Source: Mytilus trossulus (lineage: Eukaryota). Taken from it: a stretch of DNA of 64,000 bases. The notes below the pieces were generated by a model. It did no database searches and was not told where the DNA came from. It worked only from the letters and a program-made list of their open reading frames with translations. This document shows positions 33,096 through 64,000 of this stretch, one piece after another. Numbering within the stretch: position 1 is the stretch's first letter; every line of letters starts with the position of its first letter. The stretch covers positions 89,094,001-89,158,000 of the forward strand of contig NC_086375.1 in NCBI RefSeq assembly GCF_036588685.1. Reading direction: 5' to 3'. A program made the translations under genes and the position numbers.

Positions 33096-33364
33096 AACCA
33101 TGCTTTATGGTTACTATCTGACCCGTTCTTTTATATTAAAATCAAAATTGAAATAAACTTTTTCGTATAAATATTAACACAATTGAATTGTTTGTGATTA
33201 TCATTCTCTAGTATTTTTATACTTATGTTTTAGTAATCTTCACCAATCATTTAATAAAGTACAATGCATACATAAAGAATTTCAACAATGGTTATGAATG
33301 ACAATAGGTATGACCAAGTAAATTTAACTTCAATCAACATTATTTTACCACTCGAATCTATTGC

Positions 33365-33690
33365 ACTTTAGGCAACAGTAGTTTACCTCATACATTAATT
33401 TAACTTTAGGCAACAGCAGTTTACCTCTAAACTCTTGAATTTGAGGCAAATATTAGTTACCCCATGAATCTCTGACACTTCAGGCAATAGTAGTCTACCT
33501 CACAAATATATCTAACTTTAGGCAACAGAAGTTTACCTCATTAAACTTTTGATCTTTAAGCAACAATTGATAATATTTTATAGATCAATCAAACACTACG
33601 CAACAGAAATTCACATCCTAGATCCATTGCGTTTAGGCGAATAGTAGTTTTACTCATAAACCCATAACACAGGCAACAGTAGTTTAACTC
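33365..33690. repeat. Degenerate ~38-40-bp tandem array (AGGCAACAGTAGTTTACCTC core)
   Basis: The core motif recurs near 33370, 33408, 33444, 33482, 33520, 33600, 33635 and 33671. Confidence 0.75.
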
Positions 33691-36494
33691 AATGGCGCAG
33701 TTTAAAATTATCTCTCTTAAAATTGTCCCCGTTCTTTTTTACATGTAACTAGATATTCACAAGTATAAGTCATTAGCTGACATAACCTGTTACTTACAGT
33801 TCATTATCTTATTTAATCAGGTGTTTACAAGCATCTAAGCAGCAAATGATTCACTCGTTAAATAAAATCAAAAACCTTGATAATATGTTTGAGACAAAAT
33901 AATATGCAAAGTTATTTGAATGGTTATCAAGCATAAACAATATGTTTTTGAAAGCTTGGAAAATAAGATTAAATGCATGTTTAGTTTTGAAAACATAGTC
34001 TGAGAACACATGTCACATTGTTCGTGGTCCATCTTATTCATAGTTGGTTGTTGATTGATGCCATTATCTGGAAGAATCATAAGACAATAGTATTTTCAAG
34101 GTAACTATTCAATCACAAGATTTCACAAAATATTCTACACTGCATTACATACACATGAATATAAAATTGAGAATCAAAATGGGAAATGTGTCAAAGAGAC
34201 AACAACTCGACCAAGGGGAAGAAGTCTATGCATTTGTTAATGTACAAATTGGAATTAATTAGTACCTATAACCCTCCTCGTTTACGCATGTATTGAAGTT
34301 GTTTCTGGTGTATTGCATTCGAATTATTACCTATATTGACAAAAATCCAGCTTGCTTATATTTCTAGTATAGGATCATCCTATATTGTACTGCATGAACA
34401 TATATTTGTAAATAGATTATTATAATAAAAAATCATCTTTAATCTGAAATAACTGTTTTAATTTCTTGATGTAATAAAAATGAAAAATAATATTAATAAT
34501 AGATCATCTGCATTCCTTCAAGGTAATACTTATAAGAGATTACGTTGTGGTTAGAGTTAGAGTAACTATTCAACTTGTTCTTAACACATTATTGTGTGAG
34601 TGTGACAGGTTGCAAATATTCATAAAATAAATAAAATAAAATAAGACAATCATTGGACTCAACACCAATAAAGTATCTCAGGAAAGCCTTTTGTTGATTC
34701 GGCCATCAGAAGTAATCGAATCTCGCTAAAATTATTGCAACAGGTTTTTAAATTAAACATGCTTGAAGGGTCAAATTCAGGTTAAAATTACTACAATGGA
34801 GATGATATTCCTGAACTTAACTCATCTTCGATTGTCAGGTGGTCATTTAGAATTGGTATTTGAATTGGTACTTTTGTCCTTAAACTGTGGCATTTAGGGT
34901 TCATAGCAAAGACGGATTCAGAGAAGTACATCTGATCAATTCTGTAACATGCAATAAGTACATTTGTACAATGATGCCCGATTTAATTAGCACATACTTA
35001 CAACTTCTCGTCCAATCAAATTGCTGGAATTTGCCTTCTAATTTTCATATTACATACTTTTTCCGTGTACTAAGTAACTACGCATGAATGACCACAAGGG
35101 TAAGATTTCATTGTATCGTAATCAAGATATTGAAATACAAACTGCTACTGGCTATTTTGAAATAAATTTTGTGTTCCAAATTTAACTAAATAGTTTGTAA
35201 TTAGTTTTCAAACAGATTTTTAACATCCTACTAATCAATCTTTTGATCTTAATTTAATTTTGACTTTCATTTAAATAAAGAGTAATAATTATGGTGCTTT
35301 ATACCTTGATTACAGTACAACTCAATCTAAAATTTGTAATCCTTTATCTTCCATGCAATTACTTTGTACACAAAAAGAGTCAACCATGTTTCTTTTGAAG
35401 GGAAATTATTAATAAAGCAATTTGATATATTTAGTCATAAATTGGTCGATAATTGGTTGCCTAATGTCCAGTGACAAATATTTCATGCATATAAACTATC
35501 CACTAGACTACCTATGGGTACATACCAGGGGCAGATCCAGCCATTTTTAAAAGGTGTTTCAACCAAAGATGTGGGAGGGGGATCCAACTGTTTGTACACA
35601 TTCAAAAGCATTTTCAAGATAGTTTTAGATTTTAAGTGAAATTAAAAAAATGTTTTCAAGAATGTAAAGCTTTCACTGCAATTTAAGAATTGTCTGCTCT
35701 TGGTCAATTCATTTTGTCATCTTACCATGTAAACAAGTACATGTACAGTAAAACAACGCTTCGTTTATATCAATAAACATACTTACACCAGCAGCTACCT
35801 TCTTTACATTCTAAAGTCAAGGGCCTTTTGAAATCCCATTTTTACAATGATATTATAGTGAGTAGATTTACAAAACTACGTAAATGAGCTACATCCAGTC
35901 AGCCAAAACATATCAATAGACTAGTTACAGGATTACTCAAGTTGTAAATATGTGCTAAATTGGATATTGTATAGAAAGGCTATGAAAATAAGAGTTTGGG
36001 GCAAAGCCCCGCGCTCTAATTTTCATAGTATATACCTTTTCAAAATTCCTTTAACACATACATAATGAGCAGGGGTTGTTACAGACAAACGTTCACCTAA
36101 TCTGTTCCAGTCAATGGGATAATTTAGGTCGTCAATCAATGGCCACAGCCACACTGTTTTGAATATGATTCTATTGTAATCCTGGAAGTTCATATTATTT
36201 GTCATTGATTTTGCTTTCTTACTTATCCATAACGAAACAACCCCAGTACGATATACAATCATATTATGTACAGTTTGGAAAATTCAAAAATCGAATGTAC
36301 TGGAAACTTAGCACAATCACAAATTAACCTGATACAAATCTTGACATCCAGAGTTCTGCCAGTTGTTAGTGTATATCATGTTTGTGACAGAAAGATTCGT
36401 GATCACAATTGTCTTTATAATTTAAAATTGTTTCTTACTTGAATGGCACTAACTTAAGAACAATATTTTCTTTCAAATTGAATTCTTGTATGAT

Positions 36495-37092
36495 TCATTT
36501 CTTCTTTCCTTTCTTTGGTTTAATTTTTGGTTCTACGTCCTCATATTCTTCGCTTGATGCTATTTTTTCCTCTTCAAGTTTTAGATATAAGTGTGTTCTA
36601 CTTAGATGTTCCACCGGTTCTTCGTAGCCTAGCACTTCCAGTTCTTGGACATTCTGATAAGCGTCCGTATTTTCACTGTTATCCCTGCTGTTTATTACAC
36701 GTTGTTTTTTAATTATATCTTCATATTCCTTTTGTCCTTCATTACTGTATAAACTGCCAGTATGTTTGCCTGTTTGTTCGTCCTCCATAGCCACATATTC
36801 CATTTGAGGTTCCACGTTTTTGTCGTTATTCATATTGCTCTGGCCTTCCATTGGCATGTACTCTGCGTCAAGTGTATTGTCTGATATCACTGTATCCGCC
36901 TCGTTTTGATAAGTTGTACATGTATTTAATGACTTCTCTTCATCTTTATTACAAATGGTTTGCTCAGTGTGCTCATAATGGTTTGGCTTTGATTTCCGTC
37001 CAGTTTTGAAAACATCTTTGTTGGTGCTATTCACTTCTTCACTTTTGAGAGCTTCGTGAGTTGGAACGGGATCGAATCTTCGTCTATGAAAT
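36495..37092 (-). CDS. Receptor A exon 6: cytoplasmic Tyr-motif tail
   Basis: catttcAG acceptor, in frame with ORF 36495-37034; motifs YQNE, YMPM, YVAM, YSNE, YEDI, YQNV, YEEP, YLKL, YEDV. Confidence 0.85.
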
Positions 37093-40000
37093 CTGAAATG
37101 ATTTTGTTAATATGCAGGTTAATAATTTCGCTCCGATATGGTACCCTAAAACTGTTTATTTTCTATTCTGAAAAATAAGACTGTTTTATTGTTATAATAT
37201 CAGTTTGTCTTCTCGGTTGAATGTTTCCCATATTTCGCGTTATCGCGTTATCGATTTTGATCATTATCTTAAGTCAAACAGTGACGTGGAGTGTATGTGT
37301 TGTGAACCAATTGGGGAAAATATGAAGCAACACTCCTTATTCTTATCTAAAAAAAAAATTATTACAACTTGATTTTTTCTGACTAAGTATATTTTATATG
37401 TTTTCATAAATCCAACCAAAACTTTTATCCTATACATATGCATACCTTTTGTAGATGATCATTGTCATGGTAACTATAAAAACCATGAAAACTAAGATAC
37501 TTCCTGCCACTGCAGCTACTAATGTAACTAAAAATGTAATAACATTAAGTTACAATTAACCTTCTAAAATTGGACGAAGTTACAATTAACCTTCTTTTTA
37601 AAAGCGGATGATCTTTCATTGACAAAGAGAAAATCAAAATATCAATCACATATAAATCAAGTTTATGATATTAATGGAAATAATAGAATTAACACATACG
37701 TTTGTACTAACTCTATAGCCGACAATACGTTATTTCTCATTACAGAAGGCCGTACGGTTGCCTAACTTAGATCTACTTCATTTCTACCTTGGTGACAGTT
37801 GTCGCTTTGCCACATCTCCATATTTTGATAGAGTATGAGATACCTGTCATGTATAAATACAATAACGATATTCGTTTTAAGGTTTATGCAATTAACAAAA
37901 GTTATGTGTTCCACGACACCGCGATATTTTTTCGTTGTATGATGTCATCGTTTCATTTTTTGTAAAAAAAATAAAATTGCTGAGTTTGTCAGTCAAAATT
38001 GATTTCGTACGTGTACTATGCAGTACAACTTCTTAACATGTTCATCTGTTTACGTAGAGGACTACATACACTTCTGACACCTGCTCATACGTCAGGCGTA
38101 CTACATCGAAAGCGTAATTTAGCTGATTATTTTGTTTATCCATAACGTTGTACTTACTATTTATTGCGTCTTGATGATTGTTGTCTGTGAAGAATAGTAC
38201 AAATAATAGAATTATATACAACCAAAGATTATTCAGATTTTTTTGTGAAATTGATATTTATTCGAAATCTGATTATTCACAACTTTTAAAGAGCTATATT
38301 GTCCTGACGTATATCGTGGACTATGTGATACCCTTTAGATACAATTAATCCATAATTTATGTATTATTTAGGTCCATCAGCATCTGTTATAAATTAATAA
38401 ATTTACCTTTGGCTTTTGGGATTTTGCCAGTCCATATATTCCTTATCTGGATGACTTTTTATATTTTTTAAAAAGACAATGTGGTTAGGGAACAAGTATA
38501 CAAATTATATGTACCTGTTCCGATCAACATCCTCCTGATCCGTCTGAGATTCTACCTTATAATACTGAATTGACTGCAATCAAACGTTATGAACAGTACT
38601 GTATTTACCGCAGTAGAAAAGTTTGAAAATTGCCTGAAAAGCTGAACAAGAATGCATAATCCATTGTTCAAACTTTTCAGATCATAAACAACTCTAAATG
38701 AACGTTAAAGACTAAAATAATTTATTTGTGTATATGGAAAGTACACATACCGTCTTGAACTACACTGTACATTGACACAAATGTTGTATTTTGACCCCCA
38801 CATGTTTCATTTCCATTTCCTGGGCAAGGTGAATTACAGAATGTTTCGTTGATTTCAGTATGGGCTGGTTCTTTACTGCAGCAACACTTAGCGACATTAT
38901 GTGAGTCCAAAATATCTCCATCCACGTGACCCTTCAAAGAAATATATTGAGTGCTCTCTTTCTTTCTGTCATATTTCTAGTATATAACTTGAATTAATAA
39001 TAAATCAAATAATAGACTGCCTTTAAACTACTTCCTATACATATCATATTTTGTAACTTGGCCCCTGCTATTCTGATTTGATGCATTTCATGTAAAATTA
39101 TCAGAAAGAAACAATTAAATGTACCTTACTCAAATATAGTATCATAATATCCGATTGTAGTTCGTATGGTGACCAATACTTTTTACGTCTATGTCCTTTT
39201 GTTTCGAATGAAAACTTGTCTCTTTGGCAGTAATACCACATCTTCTGATTTCTAAACTAACTATAATTACTGCTTACAATAGATAACTTGGAAATGAAAA
39301 CTTCCAAATTTTGAACTTCTCTTTTCTTTGTAGCAACACTCAAACAGCGCCTGCATGTAAAGTATACATCTCCAAGGAATCGATAACCTTATTTGTATGA
39401 AGTTAAGTCTTTCGGAATTTTAGGTCCTCAAAGCCCTGTGGCCTTTTAATACATTTTATTCGAGCGTTACTGAAAGCTAGTTCAAAGCCTTTAACAACTA
39501 ATATAAAAGCCATACATCTGAATTATATAACATATAGATAGAGAGAAGCGTGAGAGCAAATTAAAATAAAACAACCTACCGAAGTTGCTGCCCAGGTATA
39601 ATGCTGTTCATCACAAAATTTAGAACACATTTCAATCGACATATAGCTACTCATAAAGGAAATGTTAGAATCAAAACCAGTGAAGCATCCATGAAATAGG
39701 GACAGGAAACCTGTAGTACAAAACAAAACAAAAACAGTTTGCAATCATCTTTTAATTGTTTAGTATTTGGAACAGATATATCATTTTTAAAAGGAGGTCG
39801 AGAGTAGCATTTTTTGTTTTGGAATTAGAATGTTGAGATTTTCCAAATGAATTCGTTATATGTACATAATATTGTAAATACAGGCAACAGTAGTATACCG
39901 CTGTTCAAACTCATAAATCCATGGACAAAAAACAAAATCGGTATAACAAACTAAAACCGAGGGAAACGCATTAAATATAAGAGGAGAACAACGACACAAC

Positions 40001-42846
40001 ACTAAAATGTAACACACAAGGAAACGGACCAAACATCCGTTAATCGTGCTATCTATATTATATATAGCTAGATTGGACTCCTTTTTCCGACGTAGTCGGT
40101 ATAGTTTCGGTTTGAGCACTTTGAACTTAAGGACGCTTCACTATGGCAACAGACTTCGCATGCTCGAAAATCTTTTCTGTGATTGGACAAAATGATGGCA
40201 TGGCGGGTGATTTGGTTGTGTTTGAAAAAACGTCTCGAAAATTATATCGTGATGGAAAGCAAGTGAAAAACTATAAATATTTGAACTAGATTTTTCAAAG
40301 ATTTATATTTTTATTAAAATAATTGTTTCTCCAATAGCTCTTTGCATCCATGACAGCTGTTTATTCGGGACAATAATATAATTATATAATTTTTAATTTA
40401 AACTTTGTTGTACGAACGTACATGACTTTTAGAACGCACCTATGCATCTAAGATTTCCGCGGGCTTTTGGTGAATGTAAACAGAAAGATACTACTTATAC
40501 TACCAATAGTTTCTAGCTTTGTTAACCATGAATTAAGTTTAATGTAAACAGTAGTAAATGTATATTTGGTTTTTTTATTTGTACTAGATTTTTTGACAAA
40601 TAAAATATTTAGGTGTCATCACAATATTCTTATATATTATTGCCTAAATATAACCAGACTTAGGGAGCTACCATTTGATTTTTAGGGGGGGTGGGGGGTG
40701 GGGGCTAGGATGACAAATTTTGTCCTGCATTTTTTTTAGCTGTAATCTCTGTCCTGCCTTTTTATCAAGCTTTCACTTTGTTCGGTCCTGCCTTTTTTTT
40801 TTTTTTATCCTGATTTTTTTTTTTTGCAAGTGTCTCATCCTGCCTTTTTTTTTTACTAAAAACTCCTGTCCTTCCTATTTTTATCAAATTTCATCCTAGC
40901 CCCCCCCCCCCCTAAAAATCAAATGGTAGCTCCCTTAGTAAAGAATTTCTTGTAGTTACATTCAGATGGAGATTGTATTAAAGAGGTCCTGCATCATTAA
41001 GTCATTGTGCTTCTGAAGGTTAACGAAATGATAGTTTTAAACATATACTCAAATTTAAATACGTCGGATATCTTTTTTAAAGATAGTTCTTGTTTATCAG
41101 TAGGGCGAGATTGAATGTTTTGTTCCATTGGGTTTGCTCAATTTCCTTTTCTCAGTGGTCGAGTTTGCAAGGTATGCATCAGTGGGATTGAACTTCGTTT
41201 TATGATTCGGTCAGTCTTTATTCATCATGAATTAACTGCTGCTCACGATAGTACCTAGCTTATCAAATTGGCGACTTTGCGTTAAGCGGTATTGCCCTCC
41301 TTTTATCAGTAGCGGAAGTTGGTTAGTAAACGTTTGATAAGTTGCATGCTGGGCGTGGAAATTGTCGAGCAAGTTCATTTTCACTTATATTGCATTGAAT
41401 GTTTTCTCCTTTTAAGAATTATACGCAATAGGGAGGTTTCGCGTAAAACGATATTTACACGCAAGCAAAATAGAGAGTTATACAATGGCGGAAATTGACA
41501 GTGTGACCTTGCAGCAGGCTGCTAAAGGAACACACTTTTGCAGGATGAAAGATATAAGCCAAAAAAACATATATAGGCTAAACGTTAGCCGCGTCGTCAA
41601 TTATTTTCAATTTTTGTTGCGAATTTATTTTTTCCCAAAAAGTGACTGAGGGGCAACTGCATCCCTTGTCCCTATCCATCTAGTTTGAAACAAAAGAGGG
41701 GCAAAAGATATCAGCCAAACTTATAAATAGAAAATAAACTGACATTGCCATGTATAAAAATTAAAAAGACAAACAGACAAAAAATAGTAAAAGAGACACA
41801 ACATAGAAAACTAAATTAAGCAACAAGAACCCCAAAAAAAATTGGGGTGATCTCAAGTGCACCTCAATTTATATCCCTGAAGTTTTTAGATAAAAAAAAA
41901 TTTCTTGATATTTAATATGCTTTACATCAGGAAGTTTGAAGGTTACATATATCCTTTTCCAGATATAACAATCAGTTTGTTAAGCTTTAGTTGAAAGAAA
42001 AATGTCATACAAATCCGTGAAATAGGTCATATATGTAGCATTTATAATAAATAGTCTATATTTTTGGACTGAAAATTTCCATATTATCATGCATAGTCTG
42101 ACATAAAGTCAAACTTTATTTATATACCGTAGTCCGTGTTTTGATAGACTGAAGAAAACAATTCGAAGGGGAATCGTCTTTCTCTTTACTCTATTTTCAA
42201 AGTTTAATAATTCAAACAAATCTAGTAGAAATAGGACTTCTCTTGACATTTCACACCTTATTTGTAAAGAAGGCTGATTGATTGACTTTTGCATTACAGT
42301 GAACAATATTTTAAGAATTTGTAGGACGGAAAAAAATGAAAATTAAAGTTGCTTCAAAGTGAATTGACCAGGATAAAAAGTGGAGATTAGGACTACCACA
42401 GGAAAAATGAAGACATGGACTGGAATTGCTCTTGCAACATGGCACCCATGTAGACCTATCAAAGAGCGGTTGCAACAGTTCCCGAATGTGCAGAGACCGT
42501 GGCATTCACAATACACAAGCCATTGCATTTCATATTCTGACAAGACGTGGCTTCGTATTTATACATCCTGTACAACCAAGACGTCTCTCTTTTGACAGTT
42601 TTATTCCCAGATGAGAGTATCCAGTGAAGACATAATATCTATACCTAACCAAGCCTTTTTTATTTCAAAGGAAAAGTGGCGTCGGCTACAGTAATTAGGA
42701 ACATTACGTAATCTACTTTTTTATTCTTTTTCTTTTAAACTGACAGTGATAACAATAACCCTAAATACAATACTATACTCACATTTAGACTGTCCCGTAT
42801 AAAAAAATAATAATATCAAAGCAACAACATAACCATTCCTTTCCAT
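36495..42846 (-). CDS. WSC-domain type I transmembrane receptor A (~375 aa): complement join(42846-42783, 39710-39580, 38976-38751, 38184-38158, 37527-37446, 37092-36495)
   Basis: All introns GT-AG with phases 1,0,1,1,2; total 1128 nt in frame. SP MERNGYVVALILLFFYTGQSKC; WSC FHGCF..MSIEMCSKFC..YTWAAT..CCCS..CNSPCPGNGNETCGG..SMYSV; TM LVAAVAGSILVFMVFIVTMTMIIY; Tyr-rich acidic tail. Confidence 0.85.
37446..37527 (-). CDS. Receptor A exon 5: transmembrane helix
   Basis: ttttAG|...TLVAAVAGSILVFMVFIVTMTMIIYK AG|GTATG. Confidence 0.85.
38158..38184 (-). CDS. Receptor A exon 4: 27-bp microexon
   Basis: cttcacAG|ACAACAATCATCAAGACGCAATAAATA|GTAAGT, phase 1-1; same size and position as in paralog B. 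Confidence 0.7.
38751..38976 (-). CDS. Receptor A exon 3: WSC C-terminal half
   Basis: CCCS..CNSPCPG..CGG..SMYSV; donor G|GTATGT. The acceptor at 38976 is the nearest in-frame AG (less certain). Confidence 0.8.
39580..39710 (-). CDS. Receptor A exon 2: WSC N-terminal half
   Basis: actacAG|..FHGCFTG..MSIEMCSKFCDEQHYTWAATS|GTAGGT. Confidence 0.85.
40663..40934. mobile_element. PIF/Harbinger-type MITE in intron 1 of receptor A
   Basis: TIR GGGAGCTACCATTTGATTTTTAGGGGGG / CCCCCTAAAAATCAAATGGTAGCTCCC; TTA TSD at 40660-40662 and 40935-40937; internal TCCTGCCTTTTT repeats. Confidence 0.9.
42783..42846 (-). CDS. Receptor A exon 1: signal peptide
   Basis: ATG..MERNGYVVALILLFFYTGQSK T|GTGAGT; phase 1 matches exon 2. 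Confidence 0.75.
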
Positions 42847-43429
42847 AATTATCACAATCGAGTTTTTTCAGTTTAAAGTCGTCAAAACACACCAATATCG
42901 TGTTCCTTTTGGAGTGTTTTAAAAATAACCTATTCGACAAAAAATTGATATATTTATTTTATTGCGATGTCACCTATTGCGTGTGTTGTGTATAAAAGGT
43001 AAATTTGTAAAACGCTAACGATACTGGTATGGTATCCGGTCAATTTAAGAAAGTTTTGGAGAATGTAAGGTTTTATTAATTAATGATATATTCTCGTTTG
43101 TTCATTATAAAAGATATATAATGTATATGTTGTCAAAACTACTACGGATTCTCTAGACTCTGGGTGTGTCTCCCTATGGTCAGGTAATTATTGCAGATCT
43201 TTATAAAGTCCATTTAACCATACAATTTAACAAAAATTAAATTGAATTTATGTATAAAGAAAAAACGCGTCAAATGAATTGTGTAAGTTTAACGTTTCTG
43301 ATATATAAAGTATGTGACCTTTCTAATAGATAATATAGATTAGTATGTCAATGATGTTCGGTTTTCGTTTGACCAAAAGGTCAATAACACTATGTACAAA
43401 AGTACGTTGACAGTAGACTACGATGTCAT

Positions 43430-43630
43430 ATGTGGTTTTGTGTAAGTGTCAATATTCCTAATATGTGTACACTACTTTATTTGTAGTTTCTGTTAGAGTG
43501 TCATTATTCCTCATTTGTGTAGACTACTACGTTTGTAGTTTCTTTTAAAGTGTCAATATTCCTCATATATATGCACCACTTTATTTGTAGTTTCTGTTAG
43601 AGTGCCAATATTCCTCATTTGTGTGCACAA
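43430..43630. repeat. ~50-bp tandem repeat, ~4 copies, interrupted by nested insertions
   Basis: TTTGTAGTTTCTGTTAGAGTGTCAATATTCCTCATTTGTGT..ACTACT units; the motif resumes near 44436. Confidence 0.75.
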
Positions 43631-43734
43631 AATAAAGGCAACAGTAGTATACCGCTGTTCGAAATTCATAAATCGATAGAGAAAAAACTAATCCGGGTAA
43701 CAAACTAAAACTGAGGGAAACGCATCAAATTTAA

Positions 43735-44125
43735 CGTCGCTGGGCTTCAAATAACATTTTTTGTCGAAAAAAAATTTGGTCAAAATACATGCTTCAAAAA
43801 AGTGTCGTATGTGACTTTGCAAAACTTTTATAAATTGCAGTGAAATAAAAACTTTGACATTTCTTAATTACTTTCACAGTAATAAAGAAATGTACATGTG
43901 TTTGATTCCAAAAGCCATTATACATTTTCATACAACATTTCGGAACCAAACTTAACAAACAACTGACATTGGAAATTTTGTAACATGTCTTATTTCAAAT
44001 GTTTAATTTGGTCTAATTGTATGCTTCTTTGGAATATCAGAGATGTCATCCAGCCAAGACTATTTGTGTCAAAAAGTATTTTTAGCCACAAAAGTCATAT
44101 ATGACATTTTGGAAGCCCAGTGACG
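43735..44125. mobile_element. MITE nested in an inverted family C repeat
   Basis: TIR CGTCGCTGGGCTTC / GAAGCCCAGTGACG. The host sequence CGCATCAAAT..ATAAG..AACTACGACAC rejoins across it. Confidence 0.75.
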
Positions 44126-46173
44126 ATAAGAAAACTACGACACAATACAATACAATACAATACAATATTTTTATTGTCAATCAAGGACGCCCTAAAAGAG
44201 CAATATAATTACAAGCAATTTGTTACAATGATTATTATTAATTCTTAATGATATGACACACAGACACACAACACCAAAAAGTAACACACACAGAAACGAA
44301 CTATAACGTAACAATGGCCATTTTCCTGACTTGGTACAGGTCATTTTATGAAAAAATGGTGACAATGTTAATTATTACATTAAATTGACAACATTACACG
44401 ACAGGGCTACAAAAAATAAATGGGAGAAAATATTTATTTGTAGTTTCTGTTTAAGCACCAGAATTATTATCTTTGCAATCTAACTGTTGATGAAGATGAT
44501 TTAAATTATCACAGGAATGCTGTCTCTTTACTGTGATGTCGTTAACCGATACTGCTTTGTATTGATCTGATGAGTTAAGCCTTTTCCAAATGATTTTTAT
44601 AGTTTGTTCTCATTGTGTGCTATGTCAACTTTAAGCAAAGGAGGATTGAAAATGTTTAACCACGACAAATTGTATAATGGCTTGTCCTAAATCATGAGCC
44701 TGTAGTTCAGTGGTTGGCGTCGGTTCATGTCAGTCATATTTAATTTTCGCGAATTGTTTTGTAATAAAACAGGCCGAAAGTTTTCTCAGTTGCATTGCCT
44801 AGAATTAGCATGTCGGGGTCTTTTGTAATCGATTATACGGTATGTTGAGGTTTTTCTTTATTTTAAAAAGTGGTACGATTGCCTATAACTGCTTTCATCC
44901 ACTTAATTTGAATATGAGTACAAATGAGACATTGCTTCGACCAAATAAAATGTGTAAAAAGTAGATTATTAGTCAAAGAACGGATTTCAACACTGATCCC
45001 ATCATCAACCCGAACATCAGGCTATAATTATTATAAAGGGCCCAAAAATGGCTGGTGAAAAACAATTCAACAAGGACAACCTACGGTCTAATTGATATAA
45101 AAACGAGAAACACTTATCAACCACATCCACAAACGACAACCACTGAACAAGAGCTGCAACCAAATGATGCGGGGTTAAACGTTCACCATAACTTGAAATA
45201 GTTTTGTAACCTTAAAACATAGAAAGACAAATGCCCTAAATTCCTGATAGTTTCCATTTGAGCATTTTAACTTTTTCTTGTATAACCACAATCGTGTAGT
45301 CATTACGGATAAGATTTTATCGACCCAATTTTAATTTTAACGACATTTGATCACTCATCTTTGACTTCGTGCAGGAATGTTATTGCCAGACCATACGCTG
45401 AAAATGAACATTTCTGACGAGATATATTGTCGTTGGTGTGTGGTGTTTATGTAGTGATGCTGCAGAGGTTAAAGACAGGAACATATTAAGAGATTCAGTC
45501 GTTGTCATTTTATTTTATTTTTAAATTGTATTCCTCCACGAAGTTGAATTGGTTCTTTTAAATAAAATACATCCAAGGCAAAGTATCACAAAATATTTTT
45601 TTTTATCATTTTCTCTCATTTTCGCCATAACTAGCACGTATTTTAAATACAGTAACACATTCATTATACACCAATCAATCATGTTAGTGTTATACACAAG
45701 GACAATGGCTTCCTTTTCGTAACTCGAATTTGTCAAAAGAAGTAACATCATGATTTCTTTTGAATTAACATAATGAATTATTTGTGTTGTTCGTTTTATC
45801 TGCACACAAGTCAAGTATTTTTAATTCGTCCTTCGTCTTTTCTGTACATTTGTCCGGTTTCTTGTTCTTTCCGTATGTTTGTCCCGTTTTTTGGGTTTTT
45901 TTTTTTTTACATTTGTCACGTTTCTTGTTCTTCTTGTATGTTTGTCTAGTGGTTTTTGATTTGTCCGTTTATGACTCCTTGTTAACATAATAGGATAGCT
46001 CTTTTTCTATCCGCTATTTAACACACTCCTAAATGATTTGTCTATCGTTATGATTGATATTTTTGAGGGAATGAACTTGTTTTTGGTTCAATTCAGATAT
46101 TCAAAAGAATTGCATTGGCAAATAATTGTAAGCAAAACAATATCATGATGCTTATTTCTAGTCTTTTCAATGT

Positions 46174-46765
46174 TTACTGTGACATCATAAATTCATATTC
46201 TTTCTCTGTCTTTTCAAGAACTTGTGTATCACTTTTGATGGCATCTTTCTCAGAGTAAGCATTAAGCTTTGAATAAAGATGTGGTTCGCTTTCTGTTCTC
46301 ATGGGGATTTCATATTCTTGAGAGTTTTGTTCGTCAATGTTGTAATACAGCTCAACATTGTCATTTGACTTCTGATTTAAATTTCTTTCGACTTTATTAG
46401 AGTTTTCAATAATATTTATATATTGCTGGTTAATTTCGTTCCTGTTTGTATTTCTGGCAGGTCTATCCCTTAAGGTTTCCTCCACGGTTTCATATTTGAC
46501 GTCGTCTTCGTCATCAGTTTCAATCTTCATCTCTGATTCATCAGTACATTTGTTGATCGACTGATTAGTTTCACTTTTGTTCTGATATCCAACAGTCTCA
46601 TAAAGTTCCCTTTCGCTTATATTACTATTACTGTGATCAGTATCGACATAATAATTAAGCTTTCCTTTATTATCTGATTTCATGTTACGTGACTTCATTT
46701 CATTGTTTTTGTTTAATATCAAACTCTTACATTTAATGTTAGATGCTGTAGAACATGTTTGATAT
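46174..46765 (-). CDS. Receptor B exon 6: cytoplasmic Tyr-motif tail
   Basis: ctttctttcAG acceptor in frame with ORF 46174-46722; motifs YETV x2, YQNK, YINI, YYNI, YEIP, YSKL, YEFM. Confidence 0.85.
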
Positions 46766-49700
46766 CTGAAAGAAAGTGAGAAAATGAAGAAACAGCAGTG
46801 ACTGAAAATGAATAAGGTACTGAAACAGAACGTTCACCCTTATTCATATATCTTTTTTAGTTTCTTCCTCTATTTCTTTCTAAATTTACATAATCCAGCC
46901 CAGAAATATTGAAATAGAAGATGGTTTACATGTGTTTGATTTTGATTTCATTTTGATTTTATATTATGATATTGTAATGCACTATTATATATTATTATAA
47001 CATTGTCATATAAACAGGAGATTTGACTAGGCGTTAAAAAAAGGTTTAATCCCCTATTTGTTCTAAATGTCCTGTATCCAGTCAAGAATATGACAGTAGT
47101 TATCAAATAGCCCGTTTCTAAGTATGTTAGCATTTTCTTTTGTTGCAGTTTAGTGCTTCTGATATTCAGTTGTAACCCGGTTTTGTTTTCCCTTAAACGA
47201 TTTATACCTTATGAACAGCGGTATACTAGTTTGAAAGTTTTCTAATATTTTGTTGATATTCTTTAAAAATGAGGGGAAATATTGCCGTTTTTGGTTTATA
47301 TATATGTTATATATTATACAATTTTGTAAATTTCCAGTAACAAATAACCCAGGTTTCGTTGACCACCCTGCACTGTGACAGCGACCTAGACAGTGTTCGA
47401 GTGATAAATTATTAATTTCTAACTATTTTCTATCATGTTTCTTACCTTCTGCAAATAATCAAAATAACAACGGCTACCACCATGACACAAATAACTGCAA
47501 AGATTGCTCCTACCACTATACCAATAGTATTGCCTGAAGTAAATACGATTACTTCAAATATTAAGAAACAACATACACGGATTCTTTCGCATCAGTATTT
47601 AGACTTATACCTCGAATTTGACATACACAGTCATCTCAGTACGAGATTCTATGACATACGAGATGATTTTTGTTTTGAAATTATCGACTTCCCCATATTA
47701 GTAGCACTATACTAACTTCACCTACACATGAGATATACATTTCCAAGCTTATTCGGTGTTCAGGTTGCTGCAGATACTTCTCCGACTTTCTTAAACGTCA
47801 TTTTATAAAATTTACTGTTTGCAAAAGTATAAATTATTCTAAATAATAAGAAAACCCTGGCCGTATTGTGCACGACTTTTTTTTAACTTTGGTCCTCGGT
47901 GCTGTTCAACTTTGTACTTGTTTTGGCTTTCAAACTTTTTTATTTGGGCGTCTCTTATATTTGACTGTGAATTCACATTACTATAAGACGTGCCACGTTA
48001 CTTTTCTATCCCAAGTTCATGTATTTAGTTTTGATGTTATATTTTTTTTTCACATCGGATTTTGTCTAATGCCTATTTCGTTTCTGTGTATGTGACATTT
48101 TAAAGTTGTGTCGTTGTTCTCCTCTTATATTCAATGCGTTTCCCTGAGTTTTAGTTTTTACCCGGATTTGTTGGGGGTCTTTTTTTTTATCGATTTATGG
48201 GTTTCGAACAGCGATGTACTACTGTAGCCTTTATTTGTACAATTGACCAAAAATATGCCATTTCTATTTAAAACAAAGCGTAGATGGAAATCCGAAAAAC
48301 AAGATTCGGTAAATGCCTGTTGTTTCCTTGGTTGATAAATTTCATAAAAAGTTTTATTTTATCAGTTTTTATGAACTTTACCCTGTTTAAATGTACCTTG
48401 GAATTCGATATTTTGAAAAATTGTTTTTTCTACAATATGTATTATGACATCGTTCAAAGTGCTATGACTTATAACTTTATTTTATTGTTTTCCGTGCATA
48501 CTTATAAACAGGATATTATCATTAAAAATCACTTACGATTATTATGTCCTGTGTTCTTGTAACCTATAAAACATAATTATTAGAATGGTTATTTTTCCCT
48601 ATAAACTCTTATATTCTTCTCTTCACACTACACAAAAGAGAAATTTTCTACAATAATCTTTGATATGAAAACCAAATCAGCTCCCAACAAAACATAAGTT
48701 GCTATAAAGCAAATGATGTCACTAATATGTATACTTTAATGCTTGAAAATTTCGTAAAAAGGGAAATAAATAAGACAATAAATAAAAAGATGACATCTTT
48801 ATGCTATCAACGACAGAGCTTCACTTCTACTAATTACTCTCAACCAAAAGTTGAACTGTTTGGGTATATGCTTTTGATTTGTGTCAAATAATGCAGTTTC
48901 CCTGTGGTGTGTTGTTTACAAGATAGACAGAAAAAAGGTTTATCTATATATTCAAAGAGTAGTTTGAAAATACTCAAAAATGATTATCAACCGGCGTCGT
49001 ATCCGCTGATCCCTTTACACACGAATAAACTGTAAAACACGTAGTCAGCTGCTTCCAACGTCATTTGACACTATTTATGACAATAAATATTAATGTACAT
49101 ACCACCCATAGCTATACCATAAACAGAGAAAATTGTTTGGTTGTAGCCACCGCATATTTCATCCGGACTTTTTGGACATGGAAAACTGCATAAACTTTCG
49201 TTCACTTTATTCATAAGAGTTTCATTACTACAACTACAAATGATATATGCCTCATAAGCATTTGTCAGAAAAAGTGCGCCAGTTATCTTGATCTAAAATT
49301 AAGAAAAAACAGATTACTAATATTTATGAAGTTATATGAATGTTTCTGTTAAAAGTTCCAACCTAGATTTTTATGAGAACAAAACATAAATTAAAATATT
49401 GAAGACGTTTGATTATACCAGCACTGCAAATGATCATACTGAAGTTATGTATGAATTTATACAATTAAAAAAGAAAAAATCATATCACAGATTATCATAC
49501 AATTACATGGCACAGACCATATTTATCTTTCAACAAATCATGAATATTTTATAAACTGATGCAGTGTTTATATCATTTTATTGACAATTTAATGACTATC
49601 CAGTCTTAAACTGTTTCAAAAGTGTCATCAATCAACTTATTGGTAAATGGTTACTTACAGATAACGCAGCCAGGCTATAGTGACCTATTTTACAATATTC

Positions 49701-50901
49701 TATACATATGGAACTGGACATAAATGTTTTATTTACATACGAGATATTTTCTTTAACACTCATGTAACATCCATAGTACTCAAAACTTGATCCTGTTCAA
49801 AAGAAATATAAAAAATCATAAATGAATATTGTTCCATTTAAAGTATTTTTTACTACACTTTCTTTTTCTCTGTTCCCGATAAAATAGTGAACAGCAAAGT
49901 AATATTTTTTAATGCGTTAAATCTTTTCGTTTTGTTGTCTCGGTTTAAGTACCGATTCCTGTTTGTACAGTTTGCAATGAGTCACATGTTTTATAATTTT
50001 GTTCCTTTCCCACTAATTTAACGATTGGCATTATTTAGTGCTGCAGTCCGACTACACCAACACTCAATTCAAATTTGATTTGCGAAAATATAGGACAGTT
50101 GGCATCGTTATTTGTTTTTCATACTTTCTTTGTGTATGCATGATGACAGTTGATATCCATTCGTTAGACGTGTTTGGGCTGTTGATTTTTTCCTTTGATT
50201 AGGGACTCTACATTTTGAATTTTTCCTCTGAGTTCAGTTTTTTTATGATTTTATTTTTTCGATACAGATAGCCGTTTTATTTGTATTTATTTTTCTCCTA
50301 ATATTTTGTCCTTTCCGGTATTTTTGGCGGCGTTGGCAGATTTCTAGTGGTTCTTATACAATTTATTTTCAAAGTGTCTGGACTCGTACTGCATGTTGTA
50401 AGCAATACAGAAAGCGTGTGCAGCAGGTTTTGGCATGTTTTATCGTCTTTAACGTTAGTTGTTCTACCACGGAAAGATGAGTGCTACTGGTTGACCGACA
50501 CATGGCCATCATAAACAAGGTGTATGCATATGACTACATTACATATAATTTATAAGATATCCTAAGAATAAAAGAATAGCACGCAAATGTTTAAATTATT
50601 TTTTGTCTAATACGTTGAACCGGATACGAAATAAATAAAATAAGATAAGATAAAAAATTGAAAAGGCGACACCAAGTCGTGAATTTCATGGGATCAACGA
50701 GAAAGTAGCAAAGACCTAAATATTTAGACTGGAGGAAGAGTTTATGTATTTCTATGATCCATCAATGATAAGCCTATTCTTTTGAATTCAACTATAATCT
50801 GAGACGTACATTTATAAAGTAGTGTAAATTTATCCAATCTTACCTTGTACGAAAATTACACAACATAAGTAGAACGTACACAACTTGAAGATGAAAGTCA
50901 T
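46174..50901 (-). CDS. WSC-domain type I transmembrane receptor B (~362 aa): complement join(50901-50844, 49792-49659, 49292-49103, 48563-48537, 47533-47446, 46765-46174)
   Basis: All introns GT-AG with phases 1,0,1,1,2, identical to A; 1089 nt in frame. SP MTFIFKLCTFYLCCVIFVQG; WSC YYGCY..MSSSICIEYC..YSLAAL..CSCS..CSFPCPKSPDEICGG..FSVY; TM IGIVVGAIFAVICVMVVAVVILIIC-RR; Tyr-rich tail. Confidence 0.87.
47446..47533 (-). CDS. Receptor B exon 5: transmembrane helix
   Basis: tacttcAG|..NTIGIVVGAIFAVICVMVVAVVILIICR AG|GTAAGA. Confidence 0.88.
47575..47800 (+). mobile_element. Penelope-like RT fragment (intronic)
   Basis: YLDLYLEFDIHSHLSTRFYDIRDDFCFEIIDFP followed by frameshifted ..TSP...IYISKLIR; RT C-terminal signature. 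A smaller piece lies at ~39310-39385. Confidence 0.7.
48537..48563 (-). CDS. Receptor B exon 4: 27-bp microexon
   Basis: ttttatAG|GTTACAAGAACACAGGACATAATAATC|GTAAGT, phase 1-1. Confidence 0.7.
49103..49292 (-). CDS. Receptor B exon 3: WSC C-terminal half
   Basis: taattttAG|IKITG..CSCSNE..CSFPCPKSPDEICGGYNQTIFSVY..G|GTATGT. Confidence 0.85.
49659..49792 (-). CDS. Receptor B exon 2: WSC N-terminal half
   Basis: gaacAG|..FEYYGCYM..MSSSICIEYCKIGHYSLAALS|GTAAGT. Confidence 0.85.
50844..50901 (-). CDS. Receptor B exon 1: signal peptide
   Basis: CAA ATG..MTFIFKLCTFYLCCVIFVQ G|GTAAGA. Confidence 0.8.
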
Positions 50902-51779: not shown

Positions 51780-52370
51780 ATTAAGCCTGGTTTTATAGCT
51801 CAGCTAGTTAACCCTCACTTGTATGACAGTCGCATCAAATTCAATAATATAATAGTTTAAACTGATAACAATTGTGTGAACAAAACAAACAGACATAACC
51901 GGTTAAAATTTCACAAAAAGAGGTACAGCAGTCAACATCGTGTTATAATCTTAATCACTGTAAAAGCAAACAAAAAGCAAAAAGACAAAAAGACAATTAG
52001 ACAAAGATTATTAGCTAAACTGAAAGACAAGAATACAAAAACTATCATAGAACAACAACACAATGATGGGATGTATAAGTGCACAGCCACGTCATGTGTA
52101 TTAAAAAAACAAAACAAAAAGACACATGGACAAAGCTTATTAGCAAAAGTTAAAGTAAAACATTCAACAATTATCAGAGTACAATAACACAATGACGGGA
52201 TGTTTGAGTACAGCCACGTCTGATGGATATCACCAAAACAGACTTAACAGTAAAAGTAATATTCATAAAGACAAATTAAAGAATACATAGTAAGTATATA
52301 TAACACGGTTTTAAGGTGATGAACAACGTCAGTACCAATAATCTATACTTCAAAGACCATTGTGTATTAT
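51780..52370 (+). repeat. Interspersed repeat family D
   Basis: CCTCACTTGTATGACAGTCGCATC...ATCTATACTTCAAGACCAT is similar to ~11095-11520, and to ~19570-20050 in inverted orientation. Confidence 0.6.
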
Positions 52371-63821: not shown

Positions 63822-64000
63822 CTGAAACAAAATGTTTGATATAAATAATTACTGAACTAACATACCGATCAGTATAGCAGAATTCATAACCACTATTGTG
63901 TTGATATCTGCATCGTTTTTGAAAATGCTGAAAAAGTACTCGAACTCATTTACACTGTGTAAAGTGTAGTAAGTAATAAAGGGGTTTCATATAAAAAGAG

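What the first reader, a model, noticed from the sequence alone, without database searches (positions are those of the whole stretch)
36495..50901. Tandem pair of cryptic single-WSC type I receptors with identical six-exon architecture
Both genes can be assembled by eye with GT-AG introns, phases 1,0,1,1,2 and an intact frame (1128 and 1089 nt), although most exons are absent from the ORF track. The architecture is SP, WSC, very short stalk, TM and a ~200-aa disordered Tyr-rich tail. It lacks the kringle/CUB domains of Kremen, the sulfotransferase of WSCD1/2 and the Ser/Thr stalk of yeast Wsc1. I do not recognise a named gene with this layout. Strong sequence divergence with retained Cys pattern and exon structure suggests an old duplication with both copies under constraint.
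Basis: partly seen in the sequence, partly recalled or inferred. Interest (0 to 1): 0.78.

Follow-up and report, generated by a model that had tools for sequence, protein, structure and literature searches.

The report
Paired mussel WSC-domain membrane receptor genes
Two neighbouring mussel genes each encode a small cell-surface protein with one sugar-binding-type (WSC) domain outside the cell and a tyrosine-motif tail inside; the genes are real and kept across Mytilus species, but nobody has studied them and their function is only inferred.

Summary
On the minus strand of this Mytilus trossulus window lie two tandem six-exon genes with GT-AG introns and phases 1,0,1,1,2. Gene A is 1083 nt (360 aa), not 1128.

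Each encodes a signal peptide, a divergent WSC domain split by a phase-0 intron, a 9-10 residue stalk, a transmembrane helix and an acidic tail of about 198 aa.

A spliced contig in a public run, and RefSeq proteins of 360 and 362 aa in M. edulis and M. galloprovincialis, support the models. They are only partly "cryptic". M. trossulus RefSeq splits gene A into two loci, and I found no M. trossulus protein for gene B.

WSC homology is solid: hhalign gives 97% against canonical mussel WSC domains, and gene A passes Pfam's cut-off. Gene B stays below that cut-off.

The family is tiny. There are two genes in this genome and 18 hits among 1.84 billion representatives; every family member with a species name is a Mytilus protein.

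The tails share 26% identity, yet 8 of 9 aligned tyrosines are kept. They sit in YxN, YExP, HLYxKL and EYExV/M motifs with fixed spacing.

My best reading is a kinase-less glycan-sensing receptor that docks SH2 proteins. That function is inferred and untested.

The parts
42783..42846 (-). Gene A exon 1: start codon and signal peptide (21 codons + 1 base), donor GTGAGT, phase 1
   Evidence: Identical to the N-terminus of RefSeq XP_063427642.1 (P0008). The last 86 letters of X15 contig 9 account exactly for the depth of 2.57 in bin 42700-42899 (5.98 x 86/200); this last point is inferred.
39580..39710 (-). Gene A exon 2: N-terminal half of the WSC domain (3 Cys, one NxS sequon), ends in a phase-0 intron
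   Evidence: Pfam WSC 21.1 bits, profile positions 2-51.. X15 contig 9 piece 39579-39708.
38751..38931 (-). Gene A exon 3: family-specific loop plus C-terminal half of the WSC domain (6 Cys, three N-glycosylation sequons)
   Evidence: Pfam WSC 19.7 bits, profile positions 47-82.. X15 contig 9 piece 38751-38930.
38158..38184 (-). Gene A exon 4: 27-nt stalk exon, phase 1 to 1
   Evidence: The 27 letters between 37527 and 38751 in X15 contig 9 match it at 25 of 27 positions, compared by eye (table 5c). Present in P0008 and P0033.
37446..37527 (-). Gene A exon 5: transmembrane helix followed by basic residues
   Evidence: mean Kyte-Doolittle 2.11. Joint 37092->37446 in one contig each of X1 and X15. 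The RefSeq 212-aa model P0004 starts at a Met inside this exon.
36495..37092 (-). Gene A exon 6: 198-aa acidic cytoplasmic tail with 10 Tyr, plus stop codon
   Evidence: 100% identical to XP_063430701.1 (P0004).
36116..36494 (-). Gene A 3' UTR (extent inferred)
   Evidence: X1 contig 1 (1073 nt) has 784 letters before window position 36900. X1 holds 0.89 of the sampled words of 36300-37100.
50844..50901 (-). Gene B exon 1: start codon and signal peptide (19 codons + 1 base), donor GTAAGA, phase 1
   Evidence: 17 of 19 residues identical to the N-termini of XP_076095904.1 and XP_071165869.1 (P0023, P0025).
49659..49792 (-). Gene B exon 2: N-terminal half of the WSC domain
   Evidence: Pfam WSC 15.5 bits, profile positions 19-46..
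49103..49292 (-). Gene B exon 3: loop insertion plus C-terminal half of the WSC domain
   Evidence: Pfam WSC 15.2 bits, profile positions 64-82; in the whole genome this exon finds only itself and gene A (E 2.3e-6)..
48537..48563 (-). Gene B exon 4: 27-nt stalk exon, phase 1 to 1
   Evidence: 7-8 of 8 whole codons identical to P0023 and P0025.
47446..47533 (-). Gene B exon 5: transmembrane helix
   Evidence: mean Kyte-Doolittle 2.66. 27 of 28 residues identical to P0023 and P0025.
46174..46765 (-). Gene B exon 6: 196-aa acidic cytoplasmic tail with 13 Tyr, plus stop codon
   Evidence: 166-169 of 196 residues identical to the M. galloprovincialis and M. edulis orthologues.

Best explanation
These are two intact paralogous genes in tandem and in the same orientation. 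The family has two members in M. trossulus, and every member with a species name is a Mytilus protein.

Each gene encodes a type I membrane protein. A cleavable signal peptide is followed by one divergent, N-glycosylated WSC domain that keeps the 8-Cys pattern and carries a 14-column loop insertion at the phase-0 intron. Then come a 9-10 residue stalk, one transmembrane helix, and an acidic, probably disordered cytoplasmic tail of about 198 aa.

Shown here:
- the gene structure;
- a spliced transcript for gene A;
- orthologues of equal length in sister species;
- WSC homology;
- preferential conservation of Tyr and Asn in the tails.

Inferred:
- The WSC domain binds a carbohydrate outside the cell (microbial, algal or self matrix).
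- Clustering lets a Src-type kinase phosphorylate the conserved tyrosines.
- The phosphorylated motifs dock SH2 proteins: YxN for the Grb2 class, then YExP, YxxM and HLYxKL.
- So the protein would act as a kinase-less receptor or transmembrane docking protein.

My confidence is about 0.95 for the gene models and architecture, and about 0.4 for the signalling mechanism.
For: Gene models:
- GT-AG introns, phases 1,0,1,1,2, no stop codons.
- X15 contig 9 (1453 nt) carries E6-E5-E4-E3-E2 spliced, and its last 86 letters fit exon 1. X1 contig 1 differs at 2 of 193 letters and shows the E5/E6 joint.
- P0008 equals E1-E4. P0033, P0034 and P0035 are 360 aa. P0023 and P0025 are 362 aa. The consecutive accessions LOC143066929/930 and XP_071165869/870 suggest the pair is adjacent in sister species too.

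WSC homology:
- P0008 scores 29.7 bits against the 27.8-bit cut-off.
- hhalign of the family against 9 canonical mussel WSC domains gives probability 97.1%, E 7.5e-11.
- phmmer with P0003 hits bona fide multi-WSC proteins P0012, P0017 and P0019 at whole-library E-values of 4.3e-7 to 1.3e-4.
- 110 of 120 WSC matches in this genome are half-domain pieces, so the mid-domain intron looks common in mussel WSC genes.

Topology:
- TM hydropathy 2.1-2.7; sequons occur only in the ectodomain exons; the tails have mean hydropathy of about -1.4 and net charge -13/-14.

Tail:
- A and B share 46 of 178 aligned residues, but 8 of 9 Tyr against 38 of 169 other residues (Fisher p 8.8e-5).
- Asn is also preferentially kept (9 of 16, p 0.0067). 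A against the third type P0011 keeps 8 of 8 Tyr (p 3.4e-4).
- Tyr-to-Tyr spacing of 11 then 13 residues is identical in types A, B and P0011. YxN occurs 3, 3 and 4 times; YxxPhi occurs 6 and 6 times in A and B (shuffle p 0.0065 and 0.018).
- (passages of PMC9783222): pY-x-N is the Grb2-class motif.
- (abstract and one passage of PMC8211107): amphioxus BbLcLRR, a kinase-less receptor with a WSC domain in its ectodomain, signals through Lck-phosphorylated tail tyrosines.
Against: - There is no direct evidence of ligand binding, phosphorylation or SH2 docking.
- Gene B's WSC is below Pfam's cut-off: 22.2-24.2 bits in its orthologues and 15.5 + 15.2 bits exon-wise.
- Motif enrichment in single tails is modest. 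YxN in B is 3 against 1.7 expected, p 0.24. YxxP is at chance.
- There is no ITAM, and ITIM is at chance level.
- Within type B the tyrosines are no better kept than other residues against M. galloprovincialis and M. edulis (11 and 10 of 13; p 0.68 and 0.91).
- Alignment scoring itself favours Tyr-Tyr columns.
- Raw RNA-seq run X23 (about 19% of it read) gave no cover of gene A's exons. Expression therefore looks low or tissue-restricted, and the kind of runs X1 and X15 is not on record.
- No reads were laid on gene B.
- M. trossulus RefSeq models gene A as two loci, which could reflect real transcript ends.
Confidence: 0.55

Rival explanations
1. Endocytic or scavenger-type lectin receptor. 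The WSC domain captures a glycan and the tail's YxxPhi motifs act as AP-2 sorting signals for uptake, without phosphotyrosine signalling.
For: YxxPhi is enriched in both tails: 6 against 1.8 and 2.4 expected, p 0.0065 and 0.018. There is no kinase domain and no ITAM or ITIM.
Against: Eight conserved tyrosines with fixed spacing are far more than sorting needs (this rests on my own knowledge). The preferentially conserved Asn at +2 and the conserved YExP are not explained by YxxPhi sorting.
Confidence: 0.2
2. Non-signalling adhesion or anchoring protein. The WSC domain tethers mucus, byssal or matrix polysaccharide to the membrane, and the acidic tail is a spacer or binds the cytoskeleton.
For: WSC domains are abundant in this genome: 120 matches or more. 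The tails are acidic and of low hydropathy. The tails diverge fast between congeners, about 86% identity.
Against: The selective retention of Tyr and Asn, and the exact 11/13 spacing across three types that are otherwise 26-40% identical, argues for specific linear motifs rather than a spacer.
Confidence: 0.12
3. Decaying, lineage-specific genes or annotation noise: the frames are open by chance or only recently released from constraint.
For: The family is very small, with 18 hits among 1.84 billion representatives. Expression evidence is weak. M. trossulus RefSeq breaks gene A in two and seems to lack gene B.
Against: Both frames are intact, with the same lengths as the orthologues in M. edulis and M. 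galloprovincialis. Both types are also present in M. coruscus, and type A in M. californianus. All 8 WSC cysteines are kept. A spliced transcript exists.
Confidence: 0.05
4. The two units are exons of one larger known gene, for example a multi-domain WSC/LRR receptor that includes the neighbouring LRR ORFs.
For: Three LRR ORFs flank the pair. The amphioxus receptor BbLcLRR combines LRR and WSC.
Against: Each unit has its own start codon with a signal peptide and its own stop codon. RefSeq orthologues are separate proteins of 360 and 362 aa. X15 contig 9 ends about 22 nt upstream of gene A's ATG (inferred). The nearest LRR ORF, 31716-33095, is on the other strand.
Confidence: 0.03

Closest known systems
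Fungal Wsc1/Wsc2/Wsc3 cell-wall integrity sensors
   Same: The overall layout is the same: signal peptide, one N-terminal 8-Cys WSC domain, a single TM and a cytoplasmic tail without an enzyme domain. The fungal layout is recalled. The WSC homology of the mussel proteins was tested.
   Different: There is no long Ser/Thr-rich O-mannosylated stalk; the stalk here is 9-10 residues. The tail is acidic with conserved Tyr motifs instead of the fungal Rom2-binding tail (recalled). The host is an animal. Nothing indicates orthology rather than independent assembly around a shared domain.
Amphioxus BbLcLRR (PMC8211107; abstract and one passage read)
   Same: A kinase-less type I receptor with a WSC domain in its ectodomain, whose function depends on tail tyrosines phosphorylated by a Src-family kinase (Lck).
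   Different: BbLcLRR is 699 aa with LRRNT, LRRs, WSC and LRRCT, and it uses ITIM-like motifs that recruit SHIP1 and SHP1/2. The mussel proteins have WSC alone, no ITIM above chance, and YxN, YExP and YxxM-type motifs. I did not test sequence homology between the tails.
Kremen1/2, WSCD1/2 and polycystin-1 (animal WSC proteins)
   Same: They contain a WSC domain (PF01822). Kremen is also a type I membrane protein (recalled).
   Different: Pfam finds no kringle, CUB, sulfotransferase or PKD/REJ domains on the full-length orthologues. The tail is unrelated.
Transmembrane adaptor and docking proteins with multiple pYxN sites (LAT, Gab and IRS-type scaffolds; recalled)
   Same: A disordered tail carries several Grb2-class YxN motifs plus YxxM-type motifs, with no catalytic domain.
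   Different: Those adaptors lack a folded lectin-type ectodomain. No sequence similarity was found: Pfam shows none and the big search returned none.

Membership tests
WSC domain (Pfam PF01822) | HMM score at or above the gathering cut-off of 27.8 bits | tested here: met
   Gene A: P0008 (RefSeq XP_063427642.1) is identical to window exons E1-E4 and scores 29.7 bits, E 7.9e-7, profile 2-82. Exon-wise the halves score 21.1 and 19.7 bits. Its orthologues P0033-35 score only 25.8-25.9 bits.
WSC domain (Pfam PF01822) | HMM score at or above the gathering cut-off, gene B type | tested here: not met
   P0023 scores 24.2 bits, P0025 22.3, P0029 22.2 and P0003 20.3. Window exons score 15.5 and 15.2 bits. 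E-values of 3.8e-5 to 6.4e-4 are still significant, and the full profile 1-82 is covered.
WSC domain (Pfam PF01822) | Profile-level homology to canonical WSC domains, with the eight-cysteine pattern | tested here: met
   hhalign of A5 (3 type A + 3 type B proteins) against A4 (9 canonical single-exon WSC domains of this genome): probability 97.1%, E 7.5e-11, 74 aligned columns, with one 14-column insertion in the family. The 8 Cys are invariant in A5. phmmer hits to multi-WSC proteins reach E 4.3e-7.
WSC domain (Pfam PF01822) | WSC/PAN-like fold and carbohydrate binding | not testable with these tools
The PDB sequence search gave only one chance-level hit. There is no binding assay.
Kremen family | Kringle + WSC + CUB ectodomain | tested here: not met
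   Pfam at E <= 0.01 on 6 full-length orthologues shows WSC only, plus sub-threshold TM-region hits.
WSCD1/2 | Sulfotransferase domain after the WSC domains | tested here: not met
   No such Pfam hit. The proteins are only 360 and 362 aa.
Fungal Wsc-type sensors | Long Ser/Thr-rich stalk between WSC and TM | tested here: not met
   The stalk is one 27-nt exon, 9-10 residues between WSC and TM.
ITAM/ITIM immunoreceptors | ITAM (YxxL/I x6-12 YxxL/I) or ITIM ([ILVS]xYxx[ILV]) in the tail | tested here: not met
   ITAM: 0 in all three tails. ITIM: 0 in A, 1 in B and 1 in P0011, at shuffle expectation.
Phosphotyrosine docking tail (works-like claim, not a family) | Conserved tyrosines in SH2-class motifs | tested here: inconclusive
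   Tyr and Asn are preferentially conserved. YxN, YExP, YxxM and YxxPhi are present. Phosphorylation and binding are untested.

The most novel reading that the evidence does not exclude
A receptor class, so far named only in Mytilus, wires a lectin-type WSC domain directly, through a 9-10 residue stalk and one helix, to a multi-site SH2 docking tail. That tail has three to four Grb2-class YxN sites, a YExP site and YxxM sites, with a rigidly spaced Tyr-11-Tyr-13-Tyr module. This would be a kinase-less glycan-to-phosphotyrosine sensor. It has the same layout as fungal Wsc wall sensors, built independently in an animal. The two paralogues, which differ in the WSC loop insertion and in the A-only YMPM/YVAM sites, would read different glycans or recruit different effectors.
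Probability: 0.3. Interest if true: 0.55.

Novelty: new variant of a known kind. Interest (0 to 1): 0.36.

Why it matters
It corrects the M. trossulus annotation: gene A is one gene rather than two loci, and gene B appears to lack a protein model.

It also defines a very small family with an architecture not described for animal WSC proteins: a single WSC domain, a minimal stalk, a TM helix and a conserved tyrosine-motif tail. Every family member that carries a species name is a Mytilus protein.

Bivalves rely on expanded innate recognition repertoires. A lectin-type domain coupled directly to SH2-class docking motifs would be a compact, testable model of how invertebrate kinase-less receptors signal.

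The matter is modest. The genes are already predicted in sister species, the family is small, and the function is not demonstrated.

Tried and rejected
1. Proximal exon 1 for gene A (39914..39866, weak donor GTACAT). I rejected it. It lies in a high-copy repeat (depth in the thousands in all runs), and P0008 and P0033 use the distal exon at 42846..42783.

3. Profile from exon fragments plus database proteins (A2 and A3). MAFFT misplaced the short pieces, so I did not use these alignments and ran the big search with the single protein P0003.

4. PDB sequence search with P0003. It returned one chance-level hit (E 0.37, Nop2 methyltransferase), which I dismissed.

5. Sub-threshold Pfam hits over the TM and juxtamembrane region: Protocadherin, EphA2_TM, PMP1_2, RCR and Rv3627c_N. 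I judge them compositional.

6. ITAM, ITIM, ITSM, NPxY and hemITAM readings of the tail. They are absent or at chance level.

7. More paralogues in the genome. Searches with A-E2, B-E3, A-E6, B-E6 and P0011 found only the two genes. The one extra hit, on C12, had E 0.099 and I dismissed it. The WSC/C-type-lectin receptor family noted elsewhere in this genome is therefore not detectably related in its tail.

8. Literature. Four searches found no description of this family. Their terms were: WSC domain with Mytilus; with transmembrane and bivalve; with SH2 and tyrosine phosphorylation; with hemocytes. The WSC mentions in PMC4581086 and bioRxiv 10.1101/2023.01.19.524809 concern 'WSC domain-containing protein 2' (passages only). 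I asked for no supplementary files, so expression tables there could still hold these genes.

9. Cluster members P0036-P0042 and P0026-P0028. They are single-exon ORFs and were not used as evidence of isoforms.

10. dN/dS. Not done, because no orthologue coding DNA was within reach.

Full report
**What the window is.** The window is AT-rich, with GC of 0.28-0.37. The last exon of the first gene is 100% identical to RefSeq 'uncharacterized protein LOC134712778 [Mytilus trossulus]'. The genome is therefore M. trossulus, and the window is G000:C3:89094001-89158000.

**Observation.** Three-frame translations and the raw sequence let me place every exon. A script then translated each exon separately.

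| Exon | Gene A | nt | Gene B | nt |
|---|---|---|---|---|
| E1 | 42846..42783 | 64 | 50901..50844 | 58 |
| E2 | 39710..39580 | 131 | 49792..49659 | 134 |
| E3 | 38931..38751 | 181 | 49292..49103 | 190 |
| E4 | 38184..38158 | 27 | 48563..48537 | 27 |
| E5 | 37527..37446 | 82 | 47533..47446 | 88 |
| E6 | 37092..36495 | 598 | 46765..46174 | 592 |
| Total | 360 aa | 1083 | 362 aa | 1089 |

- All ten introns are GT..AG, the phases are 1,0,1,1,2 in both genes, and no split codon is a stop.
- Its 1128 nt for the other gene is 45 nt too long. A scan for phase-1 first exons found none of 109 nt.

All searches with window sequence were exon by exon, and full-length comparisons used proteins that the databases returned.

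**Independent support for the models.**

RefSeq and other database proteins:
- RefSeq XP_063427642.1 (P0008, 172 aa, M. trossulus LOC134711128) is gene A's E1-E4 followed by read-through into intron 4.
- XP_063430701.1 (P0004, 212 aa, LOC134712778) starts at a Met inside the TM exon and runs through E6. M. trossulus RefSeq thus cuts gene A into two loci.
- Sister species have it whole at 360 aa: CAG2222962.1 and XP_071165870.1/871.1 (M. edulis), and XP_076095905.1 (M. galloprovincialis LOC143066930).
- Gene B has 362-aa orthologues: XP_076095904.1 (LOC143066929) and XP_071165869.1. A 349-aa M. coruscus model also exists.
- The consecutive locus and accession numbers suggest the pair is tandem there too.
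- Exon by exon, the window is 80-100% identical to these proteins, apart from the 8-codon stalk exon of gene A at 5 of 8. The tail exons score 169-170 of 198 for A and 166-169 of 196 for B.
- No M. trossulus protein of 120-383 aa for gene B appeared.

Reads (stretch 36900-42899):
- Contig 9 of run X15 (1453 nt) carries E6, E5, 27 letters that match E4 at 25 of 27 positions (by eye), then E3 and E2, all spliced.
- Its remaining 86 letters account exactly for the depth of 2.57 in bin 42700-42899 (5.98 x 86/200). That is E1 plus about 22 nt of 5' UTR. This last point is an inference, because the joint itself was among the rows not shown.
- Contig 1 of X1 differs at 2 of 193 letters and shows the E5/E6 joint 37092->37446.
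- The kind of runs X1 and X15 is not on record.
- Raw RNA-seq run X23, of which about a fifth was read, did not cover the exons. Expression therefore looks low or tissue-restricted.
- No reads were laid on gene B.

**The ectodomain is a divergent WSC domain.**
- Exon-wise, Pfam WSC hits the two halves in order. Gene A scores 21.1 bits (profile 2-51) and 19.7 bits (47-82). Gene B scores 15.5 and 15.2 bits.
- P0008, which equals the window's gene A, passes the gathering score at 29.7 against 27.8 bits.
- Type A orthologues score 25.8-25.9 bits, and type B proteins 20.3-24.2 bits, all below the cut-off.
- A profile of three A and three B proteins against nine canonical single-exon WSC domains of the same genome gives hhalign probability 97.1%, E 7.5e-11. 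The alignment shows one 14-column insertion in the family, between the 'Y..AA.S' stretch and the 'C.CS' motif. That is exactly at the phase-0 intron.
- The eight cysteines are invariant.
- phmmer with P0003 against 1.84 billion representatives also reaches bona fide multi-WSC proteins. P0012, P0017 and P0019 have Pfam WSC scores of 170-194 bits and were hit at E 4.3e-7 to 1.3e-4.
- In this genome 110 of the 120 listed WSC matches are half-domain pieces. A mid-domain intron thus looks usual for mussel WSC genes.
The PDB sequence search gave only a chance-level hit.

**Rest of the architecture.**
- N-glycosylation sequons occur only in E2 and E3: four in gene A and five in gene B.
- The stalk is a 27-nt exon in both genes.
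- The TM exons have mean hydropathy of 2.1 and 2.7 and are followed by basic residues.
- The tails have mean hydropathy of about -1.4 and net charge -14 and -13. That lies on the disordered side of the charge-hydropathy boundary.
- Pfam finds no other domain.

**Family size.**
- In the genome, searches with five exon or tail queries find only these two genes.
- In 1.84 billion representatives only 18 proteins reach E <= 0.001.
- Of those 18, seven I take as family members from their sequences: P0001, P0002, P0005 and P0008-P0011. P0015 is a possible eighth. Of the other ten I checked five with Pfam: P0012, P0014, P0017 and P0019 are canonical WSC proteins, and P0013 shows no WSC hit. The rest were not examined.
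- Every family member that carries a species name is a Mytilus protein: trossulus, edulis, galloprovincialis, coruscus or californianus.
- P0011 and P0031 form a third tail type from an unknown Logan sample. It matches only gene A's tail in this genome (40% identity, E 2.6e-7), so it comes from another taxon or lineage.

**The tails.**
- A and B tails share 46 of 178 aligned residues. Yet 8 of 9 aligned tyrosines of A are kept in B, against 38 of 169 other residues (Fisher p 8.8e-5).
- Asn is the only other residue type preferentially kept (9 of 16, p 0.0067).
- A against P0011 keeps 8 of 8 Tyr (p 3.4e-4).
- Nineteen columns are invariant across 3 A, 4 B and P0011. They spell NxY..T, YxN sites, YExP, HLYxxL and EYE.
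- The last module has identical spacing in all three types, Tyr-11-Tyr-13-Tyr.
- Type A alone has YMPM and YVAM.

Against a strong claim:
- Single-tail motif enrichment is modest.
- There is no ITAM, and ITIM is at chance level.
- Within type B, tyrosines are no better conserved than the rest against the closest species.
- Alignment scoring favours Tyr-Tyr columns.

**Mechanism.**
- pY-x-N is the Grb2-class SH2 motif (PMC9783222, passages).
- pYxxM for PI3K p85 and pYxxP for Crk/Nck are recalled, not checked here.
- A kinase-less receptor with a WSC domain in its ectodomain, signalling through Src-family phosphorylation of tail tyrosines, exists in amphioxus: BbLcLRR (PMC8211107, abstract and one passage).
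- I therefore read the pair as glycan-sensing, kinase-less receptors or docking proteins. That step is inferred.
- The main rival is an endocytic lectin receptor that uses YxxPhi signals.

**Known or new.**
- The genes are already predicted in sister species, as uncharacterized proteins or under the automatic name 'WSC domain-containing protein'.
- Four full-text searches found no description of the family.
- The layout differs from Kremen, WSCD1/2 and polycystin-1. It also differs from fungal Wsc sensors, because there is no Ser/Thr stalk.
- I class it as a new variant of a known kind, of moderate interest.

**Earlier notes of this scan.** The scan noted this stretch before as part of a putative LRR/WSC cluster (s1-823653). 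It also noted, on other DNA of this genome, a different WSC/C-type-lectin receptor family with tyrosine-motif tails (s1-826726). My genome searches found no detectable relation between those tails and these.

Noticed in passing
window 20321-21649 (-), 31716-33095 (+), 62448-63830 (-): Three single-ORF leucine-rich-repeat proteins of 442-460 aa flank the WSC pair. Pfam LRR_8 scores 70-122 bits, and one has a sub-threshold LRRNT hit. They were noted earlier by the scan as a possible recognition cluster.
   Followed up: partly
window 39100-39300, 39700-41100, 41700-41900 (intron 1 of gene A); related ORF fragment at 43688-43822: High-copy repeats with summed contig depth in the hundreds to thousands in X1, X2 and X15, and 20-70x in raw RNA-seq X23. 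They carry many fixed differences from the window copy. The proximal false 'exon 1' candidate lies inside one of them.
   Followed up: partly
window 40491->41005: Raw RNA-seq reads of X23 (12 + 11 reads from 21 starts) and one X15 contig skip 513 bases inside the intronic repeat. This is probably a shorter transcribed copy of the repeat elsewhere in the genome.
   Followed up: no
window 38045-38157 (intron 4 of gene A): RefSeq XP_063427642.1 reads through the exon 4 donor for 39 codons to a stop. That would give a 172-aa secreted WSC-only form. Whether this is a real isoform or an artefact of a split gene model is open.
   Followed up: partly
window 43445-43628, 33335-33565, 51985-52220: Tandem repeats: 52 nt x 3.5, 38 nt x 6.1 and 129 nt x 1.8. 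The first lies between the two genes.
   Followed up: no
window 57948-58394 (+): A 148-aa ORF with no Pfam hit at E <= 0.001.
   Followed up: partly
G000:C3:28.0-29.0 Mb (loci L006, L008-L013): A large cluster of WSC half-domain exons about 60 Mb away on the same chromosome accounts for many of the 120 WSC matches. Several show in-match stop codons, which are probably intron boundaries.
   Followed up: no
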